Below, piece by piece: positions 45,260 through 54,306 of a DNA stretch of 64,000 bases. The DNA lies in contig CATNEN010000038.1 in assembly GCA_950097015.1 (NCBI GenBank), forward strand, positions 26,722,001 to 26,786,000. The letters are read 5' to 3'. The notes under the pieces are model-generated. The model saw only the letters and a program-made list of their open reading frames with translations. It was not told the origin of the DNA and did no database searches. Position 1 is the first letter of the stretch. Each line of letters begins with the position of its first letter. The translations under genes and the position numbers were made by a program. The stretch comes from Macrostomum hystrix. Its lineage: Eukaryota; Animalia; Platyhelminthes.

Positions 45260-45450
45260 TGTCTCCCTGTCTACCTTTCTGTGACTCCCTGTCTACCTTT
45301 TTGTGACTCCCAGTCTACCTTTCTGTGTCACCGTGTCTACCTTTCTGTGTCTCCGTGTCTACCTTTCTGTGTCTCCGTGTCTACCTTTCTGTGTCTCCGT
45401 GTCTACCTTTCTGTGTCTCCGTGTCTACCTTTCTGTGTCTCCGTGTCTAC
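45260..45450. repeat. 22-bp minisatellite (CTCCGTGTCTACCTTTCTGTGT)
   Basis: About 8 copies in Cdx intron 1. Confidence 0.9.
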
Positions 45451-45587
45451 CCTAGTCTATGTCTTACTCAGGCGAGTAAATTTAATTCCTTGTTGTTATG
45501 CAGTAATTTATGTATTCTTAATAAAAAGTGATTTCTTGAAATGGTTTGAAAATCAATGGGTTTCTTTCTTATTTCCTAGCCACTCAC

Positions 45588-46425
45588 CGCAGCTGACTCG
45601 TCTCTTCTGCCTCCAGGACTTGATCATCTCCTGCTGGAGTCGAGTTGCCTCGCGCACATCCATAACGTCGTCGATGGGATCGTCCAGATGGGGCGGCGAC
45701 AGGGCCTCGTCAGATGAGGCCTGATCCCCAGTCACCGGGTTCGGCAACGAAGCGGCCGCTGCTGCTACCGCCGCTGCCGCGGCCGCCGCGGCGGCCGCCG
45801 CCGCTGCACTGGAGGAGTTTCCGCTGGCAGCCGACGTCGGCACTGTGACGGAGAGGGCTCCAGACGAAGCCGAAGTCAACGGCAGCGGCGCAGCCATCGC
45901 GGCGGACCAGGAGGTGCCAGAGATGTTCGAGGATGAAGTCGGCGCTGACAGGCAGGTCAATGAGGACTGCTGCTGTTGGACAAGTGCCGCCGCGGCTGCC
46001 GCTGCGGCTGCGGCTGCTGCCGCCGTTGTGGGTGTGGCTTGATGCTGCTGCATCATGGATCCGATGACATTCGGTCGACTAGTAAAATTGTACACAGGAT
46101 GCTGATGCTGCTGCTGATGTTGCTGCTGGTGTGATAACAAGGGTTGTAGGTGGTGATGCTGCTGCTGATGATGATGATGCAGGAGCTGTTGCTGATGAAT
46201 CGAAGGTCCGTGCTGCTGCTGTTGCTGCTGAATGCACTGGCTGCAGAGACAGGGTCCCGAGGGCACAGCAAGGGACGGGTGATGCTGCTGCTGTTGCTGG
46301 GTGCTGGGTGGCTGCTGTTGCTGCTGCTGCTGCTGCTGAAACTGGTACTGCGGCTGCAAGAAGCTTGCAGGAGCTGGCAGGGAGCTCCATGCTGCGCTAG
46401 ACATTGCGGCCATATCTGAGACCAC
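45588..46425 (-). CDS. cdx: Cdx/caudal exon 1 (polyQ/H/A N-terminus, degenerate hexapeptide)
   Basis: Long Q/H/A/S-rich ORF ending ...MIKSWRQKRRVSC G|gtgagt. Phase 1 joins exon 2 as GAG. The true start may be the in-frame ATG (MAAM) a few codons downstream. Confidence 0.8.
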
Positions 46426-47149: not shown

Positions 47150-47892
47150 TCATTAACAGACGAAAGGGCCTGCAATTTTTGGACCATGGCGCGGGCCCTA
47201 TAAACTGGCTCTATCCAGCCAAAAGGCCAGCACCAACTTAGTTCCCCGCCTTCTGCTCTTCGGCCAATGTTAGATAGGTGGCGGCAGAGGATACGGGGTT
47301 AATATCACCTTCAAGGTGGATGCTTCAGCGTGAGGGTGGAGATTCTAAAGAATGCGGAGGTGCTTCTGGTGCAGTGCAGTTGGCTGCATGGCTTCCTTTA
47401 TAAAATTATCTTACCGCAAACACACGCACACACACCTGCGACCAAGGTGCCATAGGTAAAACTACTAGACTAGGCAGGCTTACAAAAAATGTTTTTTCCG
47501 TTCCACGAAAGTAAGGCCGTAAAAGCGTCATGGTTTCGTTGTATCCTAAAATTTTCGATTCCAGATCGGCAGTTTCCGCTTTAAAACTGTCGTAACATTT
47601 TGATCCTAATTTTATAACTAGCTAATTTACAAGTTGTCTTTACATTAGGTTTTTTAGAAAGGATTATAAAATCAAAATTTAAATAAAATCCTACTGTCTT
47701 AAATAAAACCCTACTGTCTTTTATCATTCCCCATATAGTTCTATCAATTGAAAAGTAGCAGCAGTATCAGCGGCAGCAGCAGCAGCAGCATCAGCACAAG
47801 CAGCAACAGCAGCATCAGCACAAGCAGAAGCAGCAGCAGCAGCATCAGCAGCAGCAGCAGCAGCAGCAGCACAAGCAGCAACAGCAGCAGCA

Positions 47893-49505
47893 AATGGGCT
47901 GACAACCTGCGCATTGAGCTGAACCCCCTGAAAACGGAAGTTTGCGTGTTCTCCCGTGACAAAGCGGATAGAGACTGTCAATTGGACTTACATATCTGTG
48001 ACCAAGCCATCAAACGCAGCGCGGAGATCCGCTACCTGGGTGTCTGGATTGACCAGGGGCTTCTGTTCGCTCGGCAAACCCAGGAGGCCTGCGACAAGAT
48101 TGGCAAACGAACTGCCATCCTTCACGCCCTCGCCCATCGTGAATGGGGCTGGGACAGGAAGCTCCTCACGTCCATCTATAAGGCCATTGTGGAATCAGTG
48201 GTCTGGCATGCGGCGGCGGCCTGGATGCCCTGGCTACCCACCTGTCGTCTCGAGGACCTCGACTGTGCCCAGAGAGCGGCGCTGAGAGTAGTCACCGGCC
48301 TCCCGAAGAGAGCTCCAAACGAAGCGGTCATACTCGAAGCTAATGTGACCCCCATCAGTATTGAAGCCAAAAGAAGAGCCCTGATCGCGGTGGAGAAAGC
48401 CATGCGCAGACCGACCTCGGACCCCTGGCGGCAGCTCTGCGAGCGCACGACCAACGTCCGCCTTACCGCCAACAAAGGCCTCAGAGAGCAAGCTCGAGCC
48501 GTTGCGGAGCAGCTCCTGCCGACGGCCCGTGAATCGCTGGAATGGGCTCGTGCCCCACCGTGGCTGAATCTGACGCAAGCGAACCTAGCGCTTTTCGCCA
48601 CCCTGTGTGAACCAGTTAGCCGGGAGGACGCTGTGGAGATCAAGAAAAAGGCGGCGCTCGACACGATCCGGACACGCTGCGGGACAGGAGCCCATTACTA
48701 TACGGATGGCTCAGCGGCGGAGGGCACGACTAATGGCGGCGCGGCCTGGGTTTGTTTCACCTCGCCCGACTCAGAGGCGGTTGCTCGCTCTGGCCGCCAG
48801 CCAGTGGGCCGATGGTGCAGCTCCTTCGAAGCCGAACTGGTTGCCCTGGCGGCGGCGCTGGAGGACATCCGCGCGACTCAGCCCGACCAAGCCTCGATCT
48901 TCACTGACAGTCAGGCAGCCATTCGTGCCCTCTCCGCTGACCGCACCACCATGGACCCAAAGCTGGAGAACGTGAAGCGACTTGTCCGGGAAGTCCTTCG
49001 GCGCTCGCAGCTAACTATCCAATGGATCCCAGGCCACTCGGAAATTCATGGAAATGAAGTCGCTGATTTTGAAGCCAAGCAGGCCTCCCTCATGGACCAG
49101 AGCGCGGTGCCTATCTCGCAAGGGGCCGCGAAAAATCGCATTAGACGCGCGCTCAGGTACGAACCTGTCCTGACGGATCACCTGCTGGAAGTCTACAGAC
49201 ACCCGCTGATCCAGCACCAAGGTTGCAGGAGAGAACAGGTCTTGATCGCCCAGATCAGGTCCGGACACTGCCCGAGCTCGAGCTACTACCAGCACCGCAT
49301 TGGCGCAGTCGCGACCAGGATCTGCAGGCTCTGTGACGACCAGGTCGACCAGTTCCACGTGCTGAACTGCCCCGCTCTCGACATCACCCGGATTAACATT
49401 GGTTGCACCCTTATGGGGGACCTGGCCGATGGACGTTTGGTGGCGCGACTTCTGGAGGCCCTGAATTGGCGCCCCCTGTAAGTCGCACACCGCATTCAAC
49501 AACAA
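47893..49505 (+). mobile_element. 5'-truncated non-LTR retrotransposon A (I/Ingi-like group): RT C-terminus, RNase H, CCHC-like finger, (CAA)n tail
   Basis: KWADNLRIELNPLKTE and IRYLGVWID (RT end/thumb). RNase H motifs YTDGS, SFEAEL, FTDSQ, WIPGH...GNEVAD. QIRSGH...CRLC...HVLNC. The ORF is open to TAA at 49481. Tail ATT(CAA)n. Candidate TSD CAACAGCAGCAGCA at 47879-47892 and 49506-49519. Confidence 0.92.
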
Positions 49506-49537
<32 letters not shown>

Positions 49538-49558
49538 TCAGCACAAGCAGCAGCAGCA

Positions 49559-50662
49559 TGAACCGACCATCAATCCTCTGCTTCTAAATGACTATCGTCG
49601 TCCGTTCCGAGGTTGCTGGCGTCGCGTGGCTCTTGAGCTCACTGAGGCCGCCCATCTTGAGGCCCTTCCACGCGAGCCATACCCGCCGCCGACCCCCGAG
49701 ATCAACTGCCTGATGGACAATCCACGGATCCACTTCAACCTGGCGCTCACCGCTTTGTGCGCCCGCTATCTCCCGACGAGCATCCGACGCGACCGGGCGC
49801 TGAACTTCCTTGCCGATCTCCAACCGACGGACATCGACGTCTGGACCGACGGCTCCGTCAGGGACGGCACCTCGGATGCCTGGGGCGCCGCCGTTATCAA
49901 CACCCGCAGGTGGGGCACCATTATTGCCGCCCCTGCCGGCCGGGTTGCTTGCTCCTTCCAGGCGGAGATATGCGCGATACGGGCGGCCCTCGATTACATC
50001 AGGCAGCTGACGCCGGACCACGGGACGTCGATCCGCATCCATAGCGACTCGCTGGCGGCGCTGGCAGCCCTTGAGCACGGCCCCTGCGAGCAGCGCTCGG
50101 CTGATGGCAGCCTTTGCTGGGCAACGCTGAGCGCCTTTCAACACAGCTGCGAGTTTGTTTGGGTCCCGGCGCACTGCGACATCCCAGGAAATGAGTTGGC
50201 CGACCGCTACGCTAATCGCGCCCGTCTGGAACGACAGCAGGACTGGCCCATCTCTTTCCAAGCTGCTAAGGCGGCCCTTCGCCGGGCGAGAGCCGCCCTT
50301 GACCTCGAGGTGCTGGGGCCGTGCTGGCGCTCCACCCCCAAACACCTCAGCCGCACCGAGACGGTCGCCATCAACCAGCTCAGGGCGGGATGCTCTATGC
50401 TGGCCAATTCCACCCGCCATCGTCTCGGCCTCACTGACGACCCGCTCTGCCGCGACTGTGGCAATCTCGATACCGAAGAGCACATTCTCTTCGAGTGCCC
50501 GCGCGGCGACGGTACCCGTGTTCGCTACGACAACTGGGACGAGGCCCTGCATTTACACCCTGAACAAGTCCTCGCCCTCCTGCGCAGACTGGGGCGCCTC
50601 TGAGCGCTCCTCCTCCTCGCTGCCTGTAGCAGCTTTGGGGACGGTGGATTCAGAAGAAGAAG
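49559..50662 (+). mobile_element. 5'-truncated non-LTR retrotransposon B (different family): RNase H, CCHC finger, (AAG)n tail
   Basis: RNase H motifs WTDGS, SFQAEI, HSDSL, WVPAH...GNELAD. QLRAGC...CRDC...EHILFEC. The ORF is open to TGA at 50603. Tail ATTCAG(AAG)n. Candidate TSD AAGCAGCAGCAGCA at 49545-49558 and 50663-50676. Confidence 0.9.
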
Positions 50663-50722
50663 AAGCAGCAGCAGCAGCAGCAGCAGCACAAGCAGCAGCA
50701 GCAGCATCAGCAGCAGCAGCAT

Positions 50723-50764
<42 letters not shown>

Positions 50765-50775
50765 CAACAGCAGCA

Positions 50776-50818
<43 letters not shown>

Positions 50819-51434
50819 CAGCACAAGCAGCAGCAGCAGCAGCAGCTTCAGCACAAGCAGCATCAGCACAAGCAGCAACAACAGCAGCAGCAGCAGCAGC
50901 GGCAGCAACAGCAGCAGCAGCATCAGCACAAGCAGCACAAGCAGCAAAAACAGCAGCAGCAGCAGCGGCAGCATCAGCACAAGCAGCAGCAGCATCCTGA
51001 CACTGTTTTGATCGCATCGTATGCAAATGCATCACTTATTTACAATGCCTGGGCATTACATTTGCTAACCCCACCAAGGTGTCAACCATGAAGTTAGCCA
51101 ATAAAATCCCATATTACAGCATCGCTAATTTATATTAGCTATTTTAGAGCTGTAAAGTTTGCACCGACAACACTAATGTCGGATGAGTTGTAAAAAAATC
51201 AATGCGGTTCTGCATCCTGATCTGCGGACTCGTGATTACGAACATAAAACTTTTTTTATAAAGTCTGCATGGGTTCGAGAATCTTAATTGACTACTCGGG
51301 ATTCGGATTGACACTTTACCGTTCACTTTATCGACACTTGCAACACCTGAAGGCCGATTATGCAATAAAAACTGAAAACTGCTTTTTATTACTCGCGTAC
51401 GAACTATAGGCAATTCACTCAAACCATCTACTAG

Positions 51435-51895
51435 GAATCGATCTTTCAGGTATTGGGTTTCGATCTTTCAGGTGTTGGGATTCGATCATTCAGGTGTTGG
51501 GATTCGATCTTTTAGGTGTTGGGATTCGATCTTTCTGGTGAGGGATTTGATCTTTCTGGTGAGGGATTCGATCTTTCAGGTATTGGGTTTCGATCTTTCA
51601 GGTGTTGGGATTTGATCATTCAGGTGTTGGGATTCGATCATTCGGGTGTTGAGATTCGATCTTTCAGGTGTTGGGATATTCAGGTGTTGGGATTCGATCA
51701 TTCAGGTGTTGAGATTCGATCATTCAGGTGTTGAGATTCGATCATTCAGGTGTTGGGATTCGATCTTTCAGGTGTTGGGATTCGATCTTTCAGGTGTTGG
51801 GATATTCAGGTGTTGGGATTCGATCATTCAGGTGTTGAGATTCGATCATTCAGGTGTTGGGATTCGATCTTTCAGGTGTTGGGATTCGATCTTCT
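51435..51895. repeat. 22-bp minisatellite (GGGATTCGATCTTTCAGGTGTT)
   Basis: About 21 tandem copies with some shortened variants. Confidence 0.94.
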
Positions 51896-52458
51896 GAATT
51901 TGTGATTGAAGAGGCCTTAAAAATTAACCCCGTAATAGTTTTTTAAACTTGCATCTAAATATGTTGAATTTCGCAACACAAAACTACCCTGAACAATGTG
52001 CCTGAGTCAGTCAATGCTAGATAGGGCTCAACAGGACCGGAATTTTTGCGCTTCTCTTACGCAAGACGCGGAATCCAAGAGTAGAAATGTTTCAACAAAC
52101 AAGAATTGATATATGAAAAACTGTTGCACAACAACCTGCTTAGTTAACTTGTTCAACACAGGTTACTTCATTTTAAAGAACGCATGTAGAGAGGAAGATG
52201 GGAAGAGAGGCAGAATTATTAACTGTAAAGTGATGCAATTTTGACGTCTCTTGCAATTCTGCAATGAAAATTGCTGTGATTAACAAACAAATCTAATCAG
52301 CAAGCGTTTAGCAAATCTATTGAAAACTTTCCCCAGATAAATATGTGAACAGAATTGCGAAAACTTGTGCGATAAGGTCCAGGCATCACCACTAGATTAA
52401 TAGAGTTCGAGGAATAACCATATAGGAGATAAAGAGAAGGAGTTATAGATGAGGAAGA

Positions 52459-53022
52459 GGAAGGATAGATGGGCAGAAGGATAGATGGGGAGAAGGAAGG
52501 ATAGATTGGCAGAAGGATTGATGGAGAGAAGGATAGATGGGGAGAAGGATAGATGGGCAGAAGGATAGATGGGCAGAAAAATAGATGGGCAGAAGGAGAA
52601 GGATAGATGTGGAGAAGGAAGGATAGATGTGCAGAAAAATAGATAGGCAGAAGGAGAAGGATAGATGTGGAGAAGGAAGGAAAGATGGGTAGAAGGATAG
52701 ATGTGGAGAAGGAAGGAAAGATGGGTAGAAGGATAGATGGGGAGAAGGATAGATGGGGAGAAGGATAGATGGGCAGAAGGAAGGATAGATGGGGAGAAGG
52801 AAGGATAGATGGGCAGAAGGAAGGATAGATGGGGAGAAGGATAGATGGGCAGAAGGAAGGATAGATGGGGAGAAGGATAGATGGGCAGAAGGAAGGATAG
52901 ATGGGGAGAAGGATAGATGGGGAGAAGGAAGGATAGATGGGGAGAAGGATAGATGGGGAGAAGGATAGATGGGGAGAAGGAAGGATAGATGGGGAGAAGG
53001 ATAGATAAATAGAAGGGCAGAT
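52459..53022. repeat. Purine-rich 16/20-bp minisatellite (GAAGGATAGATGGGGA)
   Basis: Tandem units with an optional extra GAAG. Confidence 0.92.
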
Positions 53023-53671: not shown

Positions 53672-54306
53672 GGGGTAGCAAGGGGGCAGTCAGCAGGGTA
53701 GCTAGGGGGCAGTCAGCAGGGTAGCTAGGGGGCAGTCAGCAGGGTAGCAAGGGGGCAGTCAGCAGGGTAGCTAGGGGGCAGTCAGCAGGGTAGCTAGGGG
53801 GCAGTCAGCAGGGTAGCTAGGGGGCAGTCAGCAGGGTAGCTAGGGGGCAGTCAGCAGGGTAGCTAGGGGGCAGTCAGCAGGGTAGCTAGGGTGCAGTCAG
53901 CAGGGTAGCTAGGGGGCAGTCAGCAGGGTAGCTAGGGGGCAGTCAGCAGGGTAGCAAGGGGGCAGTCAGCAGGGTAGCTAGGGTGCAGTCAGCAGGGTAG
54001 CTAGGGGGCAGTCAGCAGGGTAGCTAGGGGGGCAGTCAGCAGGGTAGCTAGGGGGCAGTCAGCAGGGTAGCAAGGGGGCAGTCAGCAGGGTAGCTAGGGG
54101 GGCAGTCAACAGGGTAGCTAGGGGGGCAGTCAGCAGGGTAGCAAGGGAGTAGTCAGCAGGGTAGCTAGGGGGGCAGTCAACAGGGTAGCTAGGGGGGCAG
54201 TCAGCAGGGTAGCAAGGGAGTAGTCAGCAGGGTAGCTAGGGGGGCAGTCAGCAGGGTAGCTAGGGGGGCAGTCAGCAGGGTAGCAAGGGGGCAGTCAGCA
54301 GGGTAG
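53672..54306. repeat. G-rich 23/24-bp minisatellite (GGGTAGCTAGGGGGCAGTCAGCA)
   Basis: About 27 tandem copies. Confidence 0.95.

What the first reader, a model, noticed from the sequence alone, without database searches (positions are those of the whole stretch)
47757..50995. Two different RNase H non-LTR retrotransposons inserted in one (CAG)n array, each at the variant triplet that matches its own tail
Seen in the sequence: element A ends in (CAA)n and is flanked by a 14-bp direct repeat starting at a CAA interruption (CAACAGCAGCAGCA, 47879-47892 and 49506-49519). Element B has a clearly different protein, ends in (AAG)n and is flanked by a 14-bp direct repeat starting at an AAG interruption (AAGCAGCAGCAGCA, 49545-49558 and 50663-50676). 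Both have the same orientation, are 5'-truncated and have no internal stops, so they look young. Established: target-primed reverse transcription, microsatellite-targeting LINEs and tail-target microhomology are known in other clades. Inference: this could be a lineage of I/Ingi-like elements that targets (CAG)n, with the tail repeat selecting the exact register. In a genome full of polyQ/polyA codon runs (Cdx exon 1 is about 1.4 kb away) that would be unusually mutagenic. Caveat: TSDs inside a repeat are partly guaranteed by the periodicity.
Basis: partly seen in the sequence, partly recalled or inferred. Interest (0 to 1): 0.85.

Follow-up and report, generated by a model that had tools for sequence, protein, structure and literature searches.

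The report
Two LINEs homing to CAG repeats
Two different jumping genes (LINE retrotransposons) landed one after the other in a single CAG repeat, and their relatives across this genome sit in CAG repeats hundreds of times more often than chance, a target I found in no paper I searched, though this scan had already noted it elsewhere in the same genome.

Summary
One imperfect (CAG)n array (47757-50995) is split by two 5'-truncated, same-strand, stop-free RNase H LINE fragments: A (47893-49505, CAA tail) and B (49560-50662, AAG tail). Each has a 14-bp flanking repeat.

Genome-wide, the CAG link is real and follows lineage.
- A belongs to a well-supported group of 10 families with CAA-type tails. 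14 of 16 sampled copies lie directly upstream of a CAG/CAA array, always in sense and almost always in triplet phase. The background is about 0.13%.
- B belongs to a second clade with purine-rich tails and a weaker preference (6 of 26 copies).
- Six other families, two of them also (CAA)n-tailed, score 0 of 35.

The tail alone therefore does not explain targeting.

B is a 4.4-kb single-ORF element (APE, RT, RNase H, CCHC). It has no ORF1, an HDV-ribozyme-like 5' end and a ubiquitin-tail (LRLRGG) leader. Relatives of A carry 2A peptides.

The "variant triplet" idea is suggestive in this window (chance 0.4-6%) but is absent at other sites. The 14-bp repeat length fits the 9-13 bp seen for B in unique DNA.

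The Cdx identity and an empty allele could not be tested.

This scan had already flagged CAG-landing LINEs on other DNA of this genome.

The parts
47757..47892 (+). Left part of the imperfect (CAG)n array. Its last 14 bases (47879-47892, CAACAGCAGCAGCA) are the 5' copy of A's flanking repeat.
47893..49505 (+). Element A, a 5'-truncated LINE fragment. It holds the end of RT, RNase H and a CCHC motif. The frame is open to TAA at 49479-49481, the 3' UTR is 49482-49496 and the (CAA)3 tail is 49497-49505.
   Evidence: RNase_H E 2.9e-15. One search finds one other copy at 98% identity. One search places it in the CAG-associated clade.
49506..49558 (+). Middle part of the array. 49506-49519 is the 3' copy of A's repeat and 49545-49558 (AAGCAGCAGCAGCA) is the 5' copy of B's repeat.
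49559..49559 (+). Single T between B's 5' repeat copy and B. It is either an untemplated base or a CAT variant of the array. Other B copies have G here.
   Evidence: all other copies match from query base 2.
49560..50662 (+). Element B, a 5'-truncated LINE fragment (last 1.1 kb of a 4.42-kb element). It holds RNase H and a CCHC motif. The frame is open to TGA at 50601-50603 and the (AAG)3 tail is 50654-50662.
   Evidence: RNase_H E 1.2e-10. Searches find 10 other copies at 98-99% identity. Searches give the full-length structure.
50663..50995 (+). Right part of the array. Its first 14 bases (50663-50676) are the 3' copy of B's repeat.

Best explanation
Shown: a pre-existing imperfect (CAG)n microsatellite of about 490 bp, 1.3 kb upstream of a polyQ-rich ORF on the other strand, received two independent, recent, 5'-truncated LINE insertions in the same orientation. 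The two elements belong to two deeply diverged lineages (31% identity) of single-ORF LINEs (APE, RT, RNase H, CCHC) that have radiated in this genome. A's lineage (10 sampled families, CAA-type tails) lands almost only in CAG/CAA arrays. B's lineage (AAG or GAAA tails) does so for roughly a quarter to a half of its copies.

Inferred mechanism:
1. The element's endonuclease nicks the CTG strand of the array.
2. The freed 3' end (...TG-3' or ...CT-3') pairs with the CA of a CAA tail unit or the AG of an AAG tail unit. This fixes the orientation and the triplet phase.
3. Reverse transcription follows. Second-strand cleavage 9-14 bp away creates the flanking duplication.

Because other families with the same tails avoid CAG arrays, the choice of CAG DNA is most likely made by the protein, either the endonuclease or the Cys-rich N-terminal modules. 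The tail then only sets the register. A triplet that fully matches the tail (CAA or AAG) may be a mildly favoured priming point inside an array, but it is not required.

Full-length elements have no start codon near the 5' end. They carry an HDV-ribozyme-like 5' end and a 2A or ubiquitin-tail leader, so they probably depend on host transcription through the array.
For: - Anatomy and flanking repeats in the window.
- Other copies: A 2 copies, B 11 copies, with matching contig depth.
- B flanking duplications in unique DNA are 12, 13, 9 and 12 bp. Each overlaps the tail by AG or AAG. One lies at the very end of a (CAG)8 run, with the array on the 5' side only.
- CAG arrays lie on both sides of the full-length f207 copy, and CAG-rich sequence flanks both sides of the f198 copy.
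- Automated flank table: CAA clade 14/16, AAG clade 5/26 (6/26 counting L112, whose tail the script cut short), other families 0/35.
- Background: 0.13% of oriented positions in the window and 1.2e-4 per oriented position for exact (CAG)4 genome-wide.
- Tree of 19 families: all CAG-associated CAA-type families lie on one side of a 98/97 branch, B+f88+f85 form a 100/100 clade, and only 2 label changes are needed against 8.0 after shuffling.
- Phase is 13/14 (p 6e-6). No copy has a CTG-sense flank.
- Thirteen empty paralogs of a polyQ gene family show that the arrays pre-exist. Five occupied paralogs were hit by at least four different CAA-tailed elements.
- B architecture.
- 2A and LRLRGG leaders.
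- Ribozyme-like fold with compensatory changes between two families.
Against: - No empty allele of this locus was seen. The short-read contigs all break at the arrays, so the joins A|array|B rest on the assembly alone.
- Family labels rest on 1-12 copies each, and the genome search scored only 81 of 717 candidates, so the sampling is partial.
- Inside a pure array the length of the duplication cannot be fixed (L016 allows up to 28 bp).
- The other A copy shows only a 3-6 bp repeat.
- Endonuclease specificity, tail pairing and ribozyme activity are inferred, not measured. Rfam finds no ribozyme.
- Metagenome relatives show many tail types, and only one (L185) is followed by a CAG/CAA array.
Confidence: 0.8

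Rival explanations
1. Passive accumulation. The elements insert at random, and copies survive mainly in CAG arrays because insertions there do little harm.
For: Microsatellites are often neutral. Waldo-A/B near CA repeats in Drosophila were explained this way (PMC3812793).
Against: - The copies are young (98-99% identical, open frames).
- Sister families of similar age score 0/35.
- Orientation is always CAG-sense and junctions are in phase 13/14 times. Selection on location would not produce either.
- Several insertions disrupt coding polyQ exons.
Confidence: 0.04
2. The CAG blocks belong to the elements, as a composite (CAA)n(CAG)n or (AAG)n(CAG)n tail or one grown by slippage, and are not a target.
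For: Many 3' junctions read tail then CAG in phase. At the 3' side alone a tail cannot be told from a target.
Against: - CAG arrays also lie 5' of the elements (window; L039, L016, L111).
- The L044 duplication spans the last CAG plus unique bases.
- Copies of the same families exist with non-CAG flanks (L056, L012, L015, L022).
- Thirteen empty paralogs carry the polyQ array without any element.
- There are about 55,000 exact (CAG)4 starts genome-wide.
Confidence: 0.03
3. Tail-only targeting. Any element with a CAA or AAG tail is drawn to CAG arrays by periodic 2-of-3 base pairing, without any protein specificity.
For: Both tails differ from CAG by one base. The phase rule fits pairing. In this window both duplications start at a triplet that fully matches the tail.
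Against: - (CAA)n-tailed f203 (0/4) and f116 (0/3) and (GAA)n-tailed f158 (0/12) avoid CAG arrays.
- The CAG association follows the protein tree.
- CAAAA-tailed f158b, whose tail ends in two CAA units before the flank, and GAAA-tailed f85 also reach CAG arrays.
Confidence: 0.1
4. Assembly artefact. The A|array|B arrangement is a mis-join of repeat-ended contigs.
For: Short-read contigs stop at every array edge, so nothing independent bridges them.
Against: - The two flanking repeats, and the in-phase array restored after their removal, are what two real insertions predict.
- The same head-to-tail arrangement recurs elsewhere (L040, L074, L086).
- The assembly has only 42 contigs.
Confidence: 0.03

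Closest known systems
Microsatellite-targeting APE-type LINEs: Waldo (ACAY)n and Mino (AC)n of the R1 clade, and Kibi (TC)n and Koshi (TTC)n (Kojima & Fujiwara 2004, as listed in PMC3812793)
   Same: They are APE-type LINEs found mostly inside one kind of microsatellite in a fixed orientation. Specificity is thought to lie in the endonuclease.
   Different: The target unit here is CAG, which is not in that list and was not found in the papers I searched. These elements have RNase H and no ORF1. Many families share the target, and B's clade shows only a preference.
Dong and R4-clade elements in (TAA)n
   Same: Single-ORF LINEs that sit in a trinucleotide repeat.
   Different: From my own knowledge, not from the review: Dong uses a restriction-like endonuclease and has no RNase H. 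These elements use an APE endonuclease.
Ingi / L1Tc of trypanosomes and the related Vingi clade
   Same: One long ORF with APE, RT and RNase H and no ORF1. There is an N-terminal 2A peptide (seen here in f207, f198, f180, f203) and a ribozyme at the 5' end (PMC3708506, PMC5786205). The C-terminal zinc-finger motif rests on my own knowledge; the papers read here do not mention it.
   Different: Ingi is not reported as microsatellite-specific in the papers read. B replaces 2A with a ubiquitin-tail motif. Clade membership by RT phylogeny was not tested.
R2 / R1 rDNA-specific LINEs
   Same: Dependence on host transcription of the target, with a self-cleaving ribozyme trimming the 5' end (PMC5786205). 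Repeated insertion into one target type.
   Different: The target here is a dispersed simple repeat, sometimes coding, not a multicopy RNA gene. The domain set also differs.
Drosophila I factor
   Same: RNase H, a CCHC motif after it, and a trinucleotide-repeat tail ((TAA)n) in place of poly(A). This rests on my own knowledge.
   Different: The I factor has an ORF1 and no microsatellite target. B has no room for an ORF1.

Membership tests
APE-type non-LTR retrotransposon (LINE) | Reverse transcriptase domain of the LINE type | tested here: met
   RVT_1 E 3.9e-33 in full-length B (L041) and E 3.9e-36 in the longer A copy (L038). The window fragments themselves start after the RT core.
APE-type non-LTR retrotransposon (LINE) | APE-like endonuclease N-terminal to RT | tested here: met
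   Exo_endo_phos_2 E 1.1e-16 and Exo_endo_phos E 7.6e-07 in B. This is untestable for family A because both copies are truncated.
APE-type non-LTR retrotransposon (LINE) | Variable 5' truncation, a 3' tail and target-site duplications | tested here: met
   B copies start at different points but share one 3' end. Duplications of 9-14 bp.
Ingi/Vingi-like LINEs | Single ORF with APE-RT-RNase H and no ORF1 | tested here: met
   B is 4.42 kb with one open frame of 1447-1499 aa running from its first base.
Ingi/Vingi-like LINEs | 2A peptide ahead of the endonuclease | tested here: inconclusive
   D(V/I/L)ExNPGP is present in f207, f198, f180 and f203. It is absent from B, which has VLRLRGG instead. 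It is untestable for A itself because A is truncated.
Ingi/Vingi-like LINEs | Self-cleaving HDV-like ribozyme at the 5' end | tested here: inconclusive
   A nested P1/P2/P3/P1.1 fold can be drawn for B and for an f88-like 5' end, with compensatory changes and a G1-U wobble. The Rfam scan found nothing, and cleavage was not tested.
Ingi/Vingi-like LINEs | RT groups with Ingi/Vingi reference sequences in a tree | not tested
   No reference LINE sequences (Repbase) were available. The nearest named database hit is a generic 'RNA-directed DNA polymerase' of a barnacle at 30% identity.
I clade (I factor) | Separate gag-like ORF1 upstream of ORF2 | tested here: not met
   There is no second ORF and no room for one in the 4.42-kb B element.
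Microsatellite-specific LINE | Most copies inside one microsatellite type, in one orientation | tested here: met
   A's clade scores 14/16 against a 0.13% background, all CAG-sense. B's clade meets this only partly (6/26).
Microsatellite-specific LINE | Sequence-specific cleavage of the repeat by the element's endonuclease | not testable with these tools
   This needs a biochemical nicking assay.

The most novel reading that the evidence does not exclude
A whole radiation of Ingi-like LINEs in this flatworm uses (CAG)n, including polyQ-coding exons, as a dedicated landing pad. They insert in sense orientation and in triplet phase, so that the LINE frame continues the host's glutamine frame. 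They have no start codon near the 5' end. They borrow the host's transcription, and possibly its start codon, then free themselves with a 5' ribozyme and a 2A or ubiquitin-tail cut signal. In all four full-length copies with an upstream CAG run, the CAG (Gln) frame is continuous with the LINE ORF (L039, L044, L093, L111+L092; chance 1.2%). One of these fusions begins at an upstream ATG and is open for 1643 aa.
Probability: 0.3. Interest if true: 0.85.

Novelty: new variant of a known kind. Interest (0 to 1): 0.68.

Why it matters
Microsatellite-homing LINEs are known for ACAY, AC, TC, TTC and TAA repeats, but not for CAG in the papers I could search. CAG is the repeat that encodes polyglutamine. 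A lineage that seeks it out would be a built-in mutagen of polyQ genes. Here 5 of 18 paralogs of one polyQ gene family are hit.

The genome also offers a natural experiment for separating what the protein contributes to target choice from what the tail contributes. Sister families share tails but not targets. Site-specific LINEs are under study as gene-insertion tools (R2), so a CAG-directed endonuclease and RT pair would be of practical interest.

Tried and rejected
- An Rfam scan (E up to 1) of three loci holding full-length elements gave no ribozyme hit, only low-complexity noise on the CAG/CTG arrays.
- Read laying: all four runs are kept as contigs that end at the arrays, so there was no bridging read, no empty allele and no RNA evidence.
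I therefore used about 550-aa C-terminal pieces for the tree, not full ORFs, and could not fix the 5' ends of most CAA-clade families.
- The metagenome scan found 321 relatives with many tail types but mostly no usable flanks. Only L185 is followed by a CAG/CAA array.
- Pfam on the neighbouring polyQ ORF and on the ORF upstream of the f198 copy gave nothing.
- A loose 'cag-rich flank' criterion proved non-specific (10/35 in the control families) and was dropped in favour of the strict array criterion.
- I first read the genome as an insect (mosquito). An earlier scan note calls it a flatworm, which I did not verify.
Stops and frameshifts were read as X for the tree only.
Full report
**What is in the window**

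Between 47757 and 50995 lies one imperfect CAG array. Two G+C-rich blocks interrupt it.

Block A (47893-49505) is open in one frame up to TAA at 49479-49481. It ends in a 15-nt UTR and (CAA)3. Block B (49560-50662) is open up to TGA at 50601-50603 and ends in (AAG)3. Both carry Pfam RNase_H and a CCHC motif after it. They are 31% identical over the part that aligns, about 280 residues.

Removing each block together with one 14-mer copy restores an in-phase array of 164 triplets (114 CAG, 12 AAG, 12 CAT, 11 CAC, 9 CAA).

**Copies elsewhere**

Family A has one other copy (C1, 98.4% identical), also 5'-truncated at about 2.9 kb. Family B has ten other copies at 98-99% identity, plus diverged subfamilies. 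The depth of independent short-read contigs (about 165 for A and about 900 for B, against about 80 for the unique flanks) agrees with 2 and 11 copies.

Other B copies run upstream to a common 5' end, GGGGGCTAGGAG. Full-length B is 4.42 kb and holds one frame of 1447-1499 aa that is open from the first base. It carries Exo_endo_phos, RVT_1 and RNase_H, has no ORF1, and has no ATG until roughly residue 90.

**Target sites of B**

In unique DNA the duplications are:
- AGCAGCTCGGTC (12 bp), at the very end of a (CAG)8 run.
- AAGCAACGAAGAA (13 bp), inside the purine tail of another LINE.
- AGGGCCCGG (9 bp).
- AGCTAGAACCGC (12 bp, plus 2 extra bases).

Each overlaps the tail by AG or AAG. The window's 14 bp fits this range. 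Of 11 B copies, 3 meet a strict CAG-array criterion. Two more sit at the edge of a CAG run or in a short broken one, and the rest lie in other sequence.

**The wider picture**

A protein search of the genome with A found 717 candidate places, many with open frames of 1300-1600 aa. I fetched the 3' ends of 77 copies from 23 families or subfamilies and classified the 36 bases after the tail by a fixed rule. The rule asks for at least 3 CAR triplets, including at least 2 CAG, starting within 4 nt.

Results:
- Ten families with CAA-type tails, A among them, score 14/16.
- B's relatives with AAG or GAAA tails score 5/26, or 6/26 counting one mis-parsed tail.
- Six other families score 0/35. These have (CAA)n, (GAA)n, (CTAA)n, (CA)n or (GA)n tails.
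- The same rule is met at 0.13% of oriented positions in the rest of the window.
- Exact (CAG)4 starts at 1.2e-4 of oriented positions genome-wide.
- Fisher tests give 9e-11 and 0.004.
- No copy has a CTG-sense flank. The tail-to-CAG junction is in triplet phase in 13 of 14 CAA-clade cases (p 6e-6).

**Phylogeny**

I built a maximum-likelihood tree of the C-terminal ~550 residues, one representative per family, 19 families in all. All ten CAG-associated families fall on one side of a branch with 98/97 support. B, f88 and f85 form a 100/100 clade. The non-associated families fall outside, including the (CAA)n-tailed f203 and f116. The labels need 2 changes, against 8.0 after shuffling.

The CAG association is therefore inherited with the protein and is not a consequence of the tail. 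The tree is unrooted and each label rests on 1-12 copies.

**Target, not tail**

- CAG arrays lie on the 5' side too: in the window, at L039 and L016, and as a 130-bp array ahead of the full-length f207 copy. A CAG-rich run lies ahead of the f198 copy, with a candidate 14-bp duplication (CAG)4CC.
- The 3' flank of the other A copy belongs to a gene family of at least 35 members, nearly all on contig C1, that encodes an N-terminal polyQ. Of 18 paralogs examined, 13 are empty. The other 5 carry a (CAA)n-tailed element inside the polyQ run. These elements are A, f199, an f150b-like element, and an unidentified one twice.

The arrays therefore pre-exist, and different families hit them independently, coding ones included.

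**The variant-triplet idea**

In the window both duplications begin at the triplet that matches the tail. The chance of that is 0.4% for a fixed 14 bp, 1.7% if 11 or 14 bp are allowed, and 5.7% for 10-20 bp.

Elsewhere it does not hold. Three of the four B duplications in unique DNA begin with AG after a C. The 5' flanks of L016, L039, f198 and f207 show no AAG or CAA at the expected place.

I read it as a possible mild preference for a full-triplet match, on top of a general rule that the shared dinucleotide (CA or AG) sets the phase.

**How the elements are probably expressed**

This part is inferred.

- The first 54 nt of B and the first 71 nt of an f88-like element can be drawn as the nested double pseudoknot of HDV-like ribozymes. 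The fold has a G1-U wobble, P1 of 6 bp, P2 of 6 bp, P3 of 3 bp, a 7-nt L3 and P1.1 of 2 bp. GACUAA precedes the 3' strand of P2, 2 nt upstream in B and 1 nt in the f88-like element. There are compensatory changes in P1, P2, P3 and P1.1. Rfam does not detect it.
- B and the f88-like elements carry VLRLRGG or LHLVLRLRGG just ahead of the endonuclease. f207, f198, f180 and f203 carry canonical 2A motifs.
- 2A peptides and 5' ribozymes are known for Ingi/L1Tc and other clades (PMC3708506, PMC5786205).
- In all four full-length copies preceded by CAG, the glutamine frame runs into the LINE frame (chance 1.2%). One of these fusions starts at an upstream ATG and is open for 1643 aa.

**Comparison with what is known**

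A 2013 review lists the LINE microsatellite targets as ACAY, AC, TC, TTC and TAA (PMC3812793). A full-text search for a CAG target found nothing. The library holds only open-access papers and no Repbase reports.

The nearest database proteins are unnamed or generically named, at 28-48% identity. Metagenome relatives have many tail types, and only one is followed by a CAG/CAA array.

**Earlier notes of this scan**

Searches returned notes on other DNA of this genome. They report two RNase H LINEs head to tail in a CAG array (s1-852951), an Ingi-like LINE in a CAG/CAA array (s1-845771), a ubiquitin-tail leader (s1-845632) and an HDV-like 5' ribozyme (s1-306145, s1-262263). One note names the organism as the flatworm Macrostomum hystrix (s1-855198). 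I re-derived the first four points on my own loci. I did not verify the organism.

**Limits**

- No read bridges the arrays and no empty allele of this locus was seen.
- The clade was not placed against reference LINEs.
- The Cdx identity of the neighbouring gene was not confirmed.

Noticed in passing
L002:3112-3330 and paralogs L120-L135 (G000 contig C1): A gene family of at least 35 copies, nearly all on contig C1, encodes a small protein with an N-terminal polyQ (MDNKQQQQ...PSSPWQLLPTTVG...KK*). 5 of 18 paralogs examined carry a (CAA)n-tailed retroelement inside the polyQ run, in sense orientation.
   Followed up: partly
L039:4573-4626 (-), L037:2695-2765 (-), L086:86-156 (+): The exact 5' ends of B and of an f88-like LINE fit an HDV-like ribozyme fold, with compensatory changes between the two. 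B lacks a P4 stem, while the f88-like element has a 7-bp P4. Rfam does not detect either.
   Followed up: partly
L041:5355-5372 (+); L086:237; L092:152; L093:661; L094; L095:589: There are two kinds of N-terminal release signal in sister lineages. B and f88-like elements have a ubiquitin C-terminal tail (VLRLRGG or LHLVLRLRGG). f207, f198, f180 and f203 have 2A peptides (D[VIL]ExNPGP). Cys-rich modules follow the 2A in those four families.
   Followed up: partly
L093 (G000:C1:2792300-2793200) with L049: A full-length f198 copy sits in frame inside an upstream ORF that has a CCHC knuckle and a polyQ/polyP run. This gives a 1643-aa open frame from an upstream ATG. Another copy, on C25, has a 2238-aa open frame that I did not examine.
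   Followed up: partly
L058 (G000:C2:4171971-4172471): One copy of the (CTAA)n-tailed family f195 is followed by a long (CCAA)n array, a repeat one base away from its own tail. The other four copies are in ordinary sequence or a minisatellite.
   Followed up: no
L040:5050-5290; L074; L086: LINEs occur head to tail. B is inserted into the purine tail of an f85 element. Two other elements lie directly upstream of the 5' end of an f88-like LINE, the one in L074 ending in a CAG/CAA-bearing minisatellite and the one in L086 in only four bases (CAGC).
   Followed up: partly
L022 and L024 (G000:C2:4754491-4758707): One B copy is split by a 3.7-kb insertion. Contigs of two runs from a second study (X5, X6) carry exactly these junctions, so that copy is present, and possibly transcribed, in other samples.
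   Followed up: no
L033 and L034 (G000:C38:32456279 and 32462247): Two B-like 3' ends have identical flanks 6 kb apart. This is a local duplication, not two insertions, so I counted it once.
   Followed up: no
window 35356 (-) and 45553-46425 (-): A homeobox helix-3 exon (KIWFQNRRAKERRQKK) and, 10 kb away on the same strand, a polyQ/polyA-rich ORF starting MVSDMAAMSS. Together they fit a homeobox gene whose 5' flank holds the LINE-bearing array. Cdx identity was not tested.
   Followed up: partly
window 45260-45451, 51434-51893, 52445-53006, 53673-54000: Four minisatellites (periods 22, 22/126, 16/36/216 and 23 bp) surround the locus. Many LINE flanks elsewhere are also minisatellites that contain CAG.
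   Followed up: no
L185 (metagenome contig Ga0126329_10017580): A distant relative from a metagenome has a 3' UTR that runs straight into a mixed CAA/CAG array. Other metagenome relatives carry GAA, TTGA, ATC, GTAAA, GGTAA or CAAA tails.
   Followed up: no
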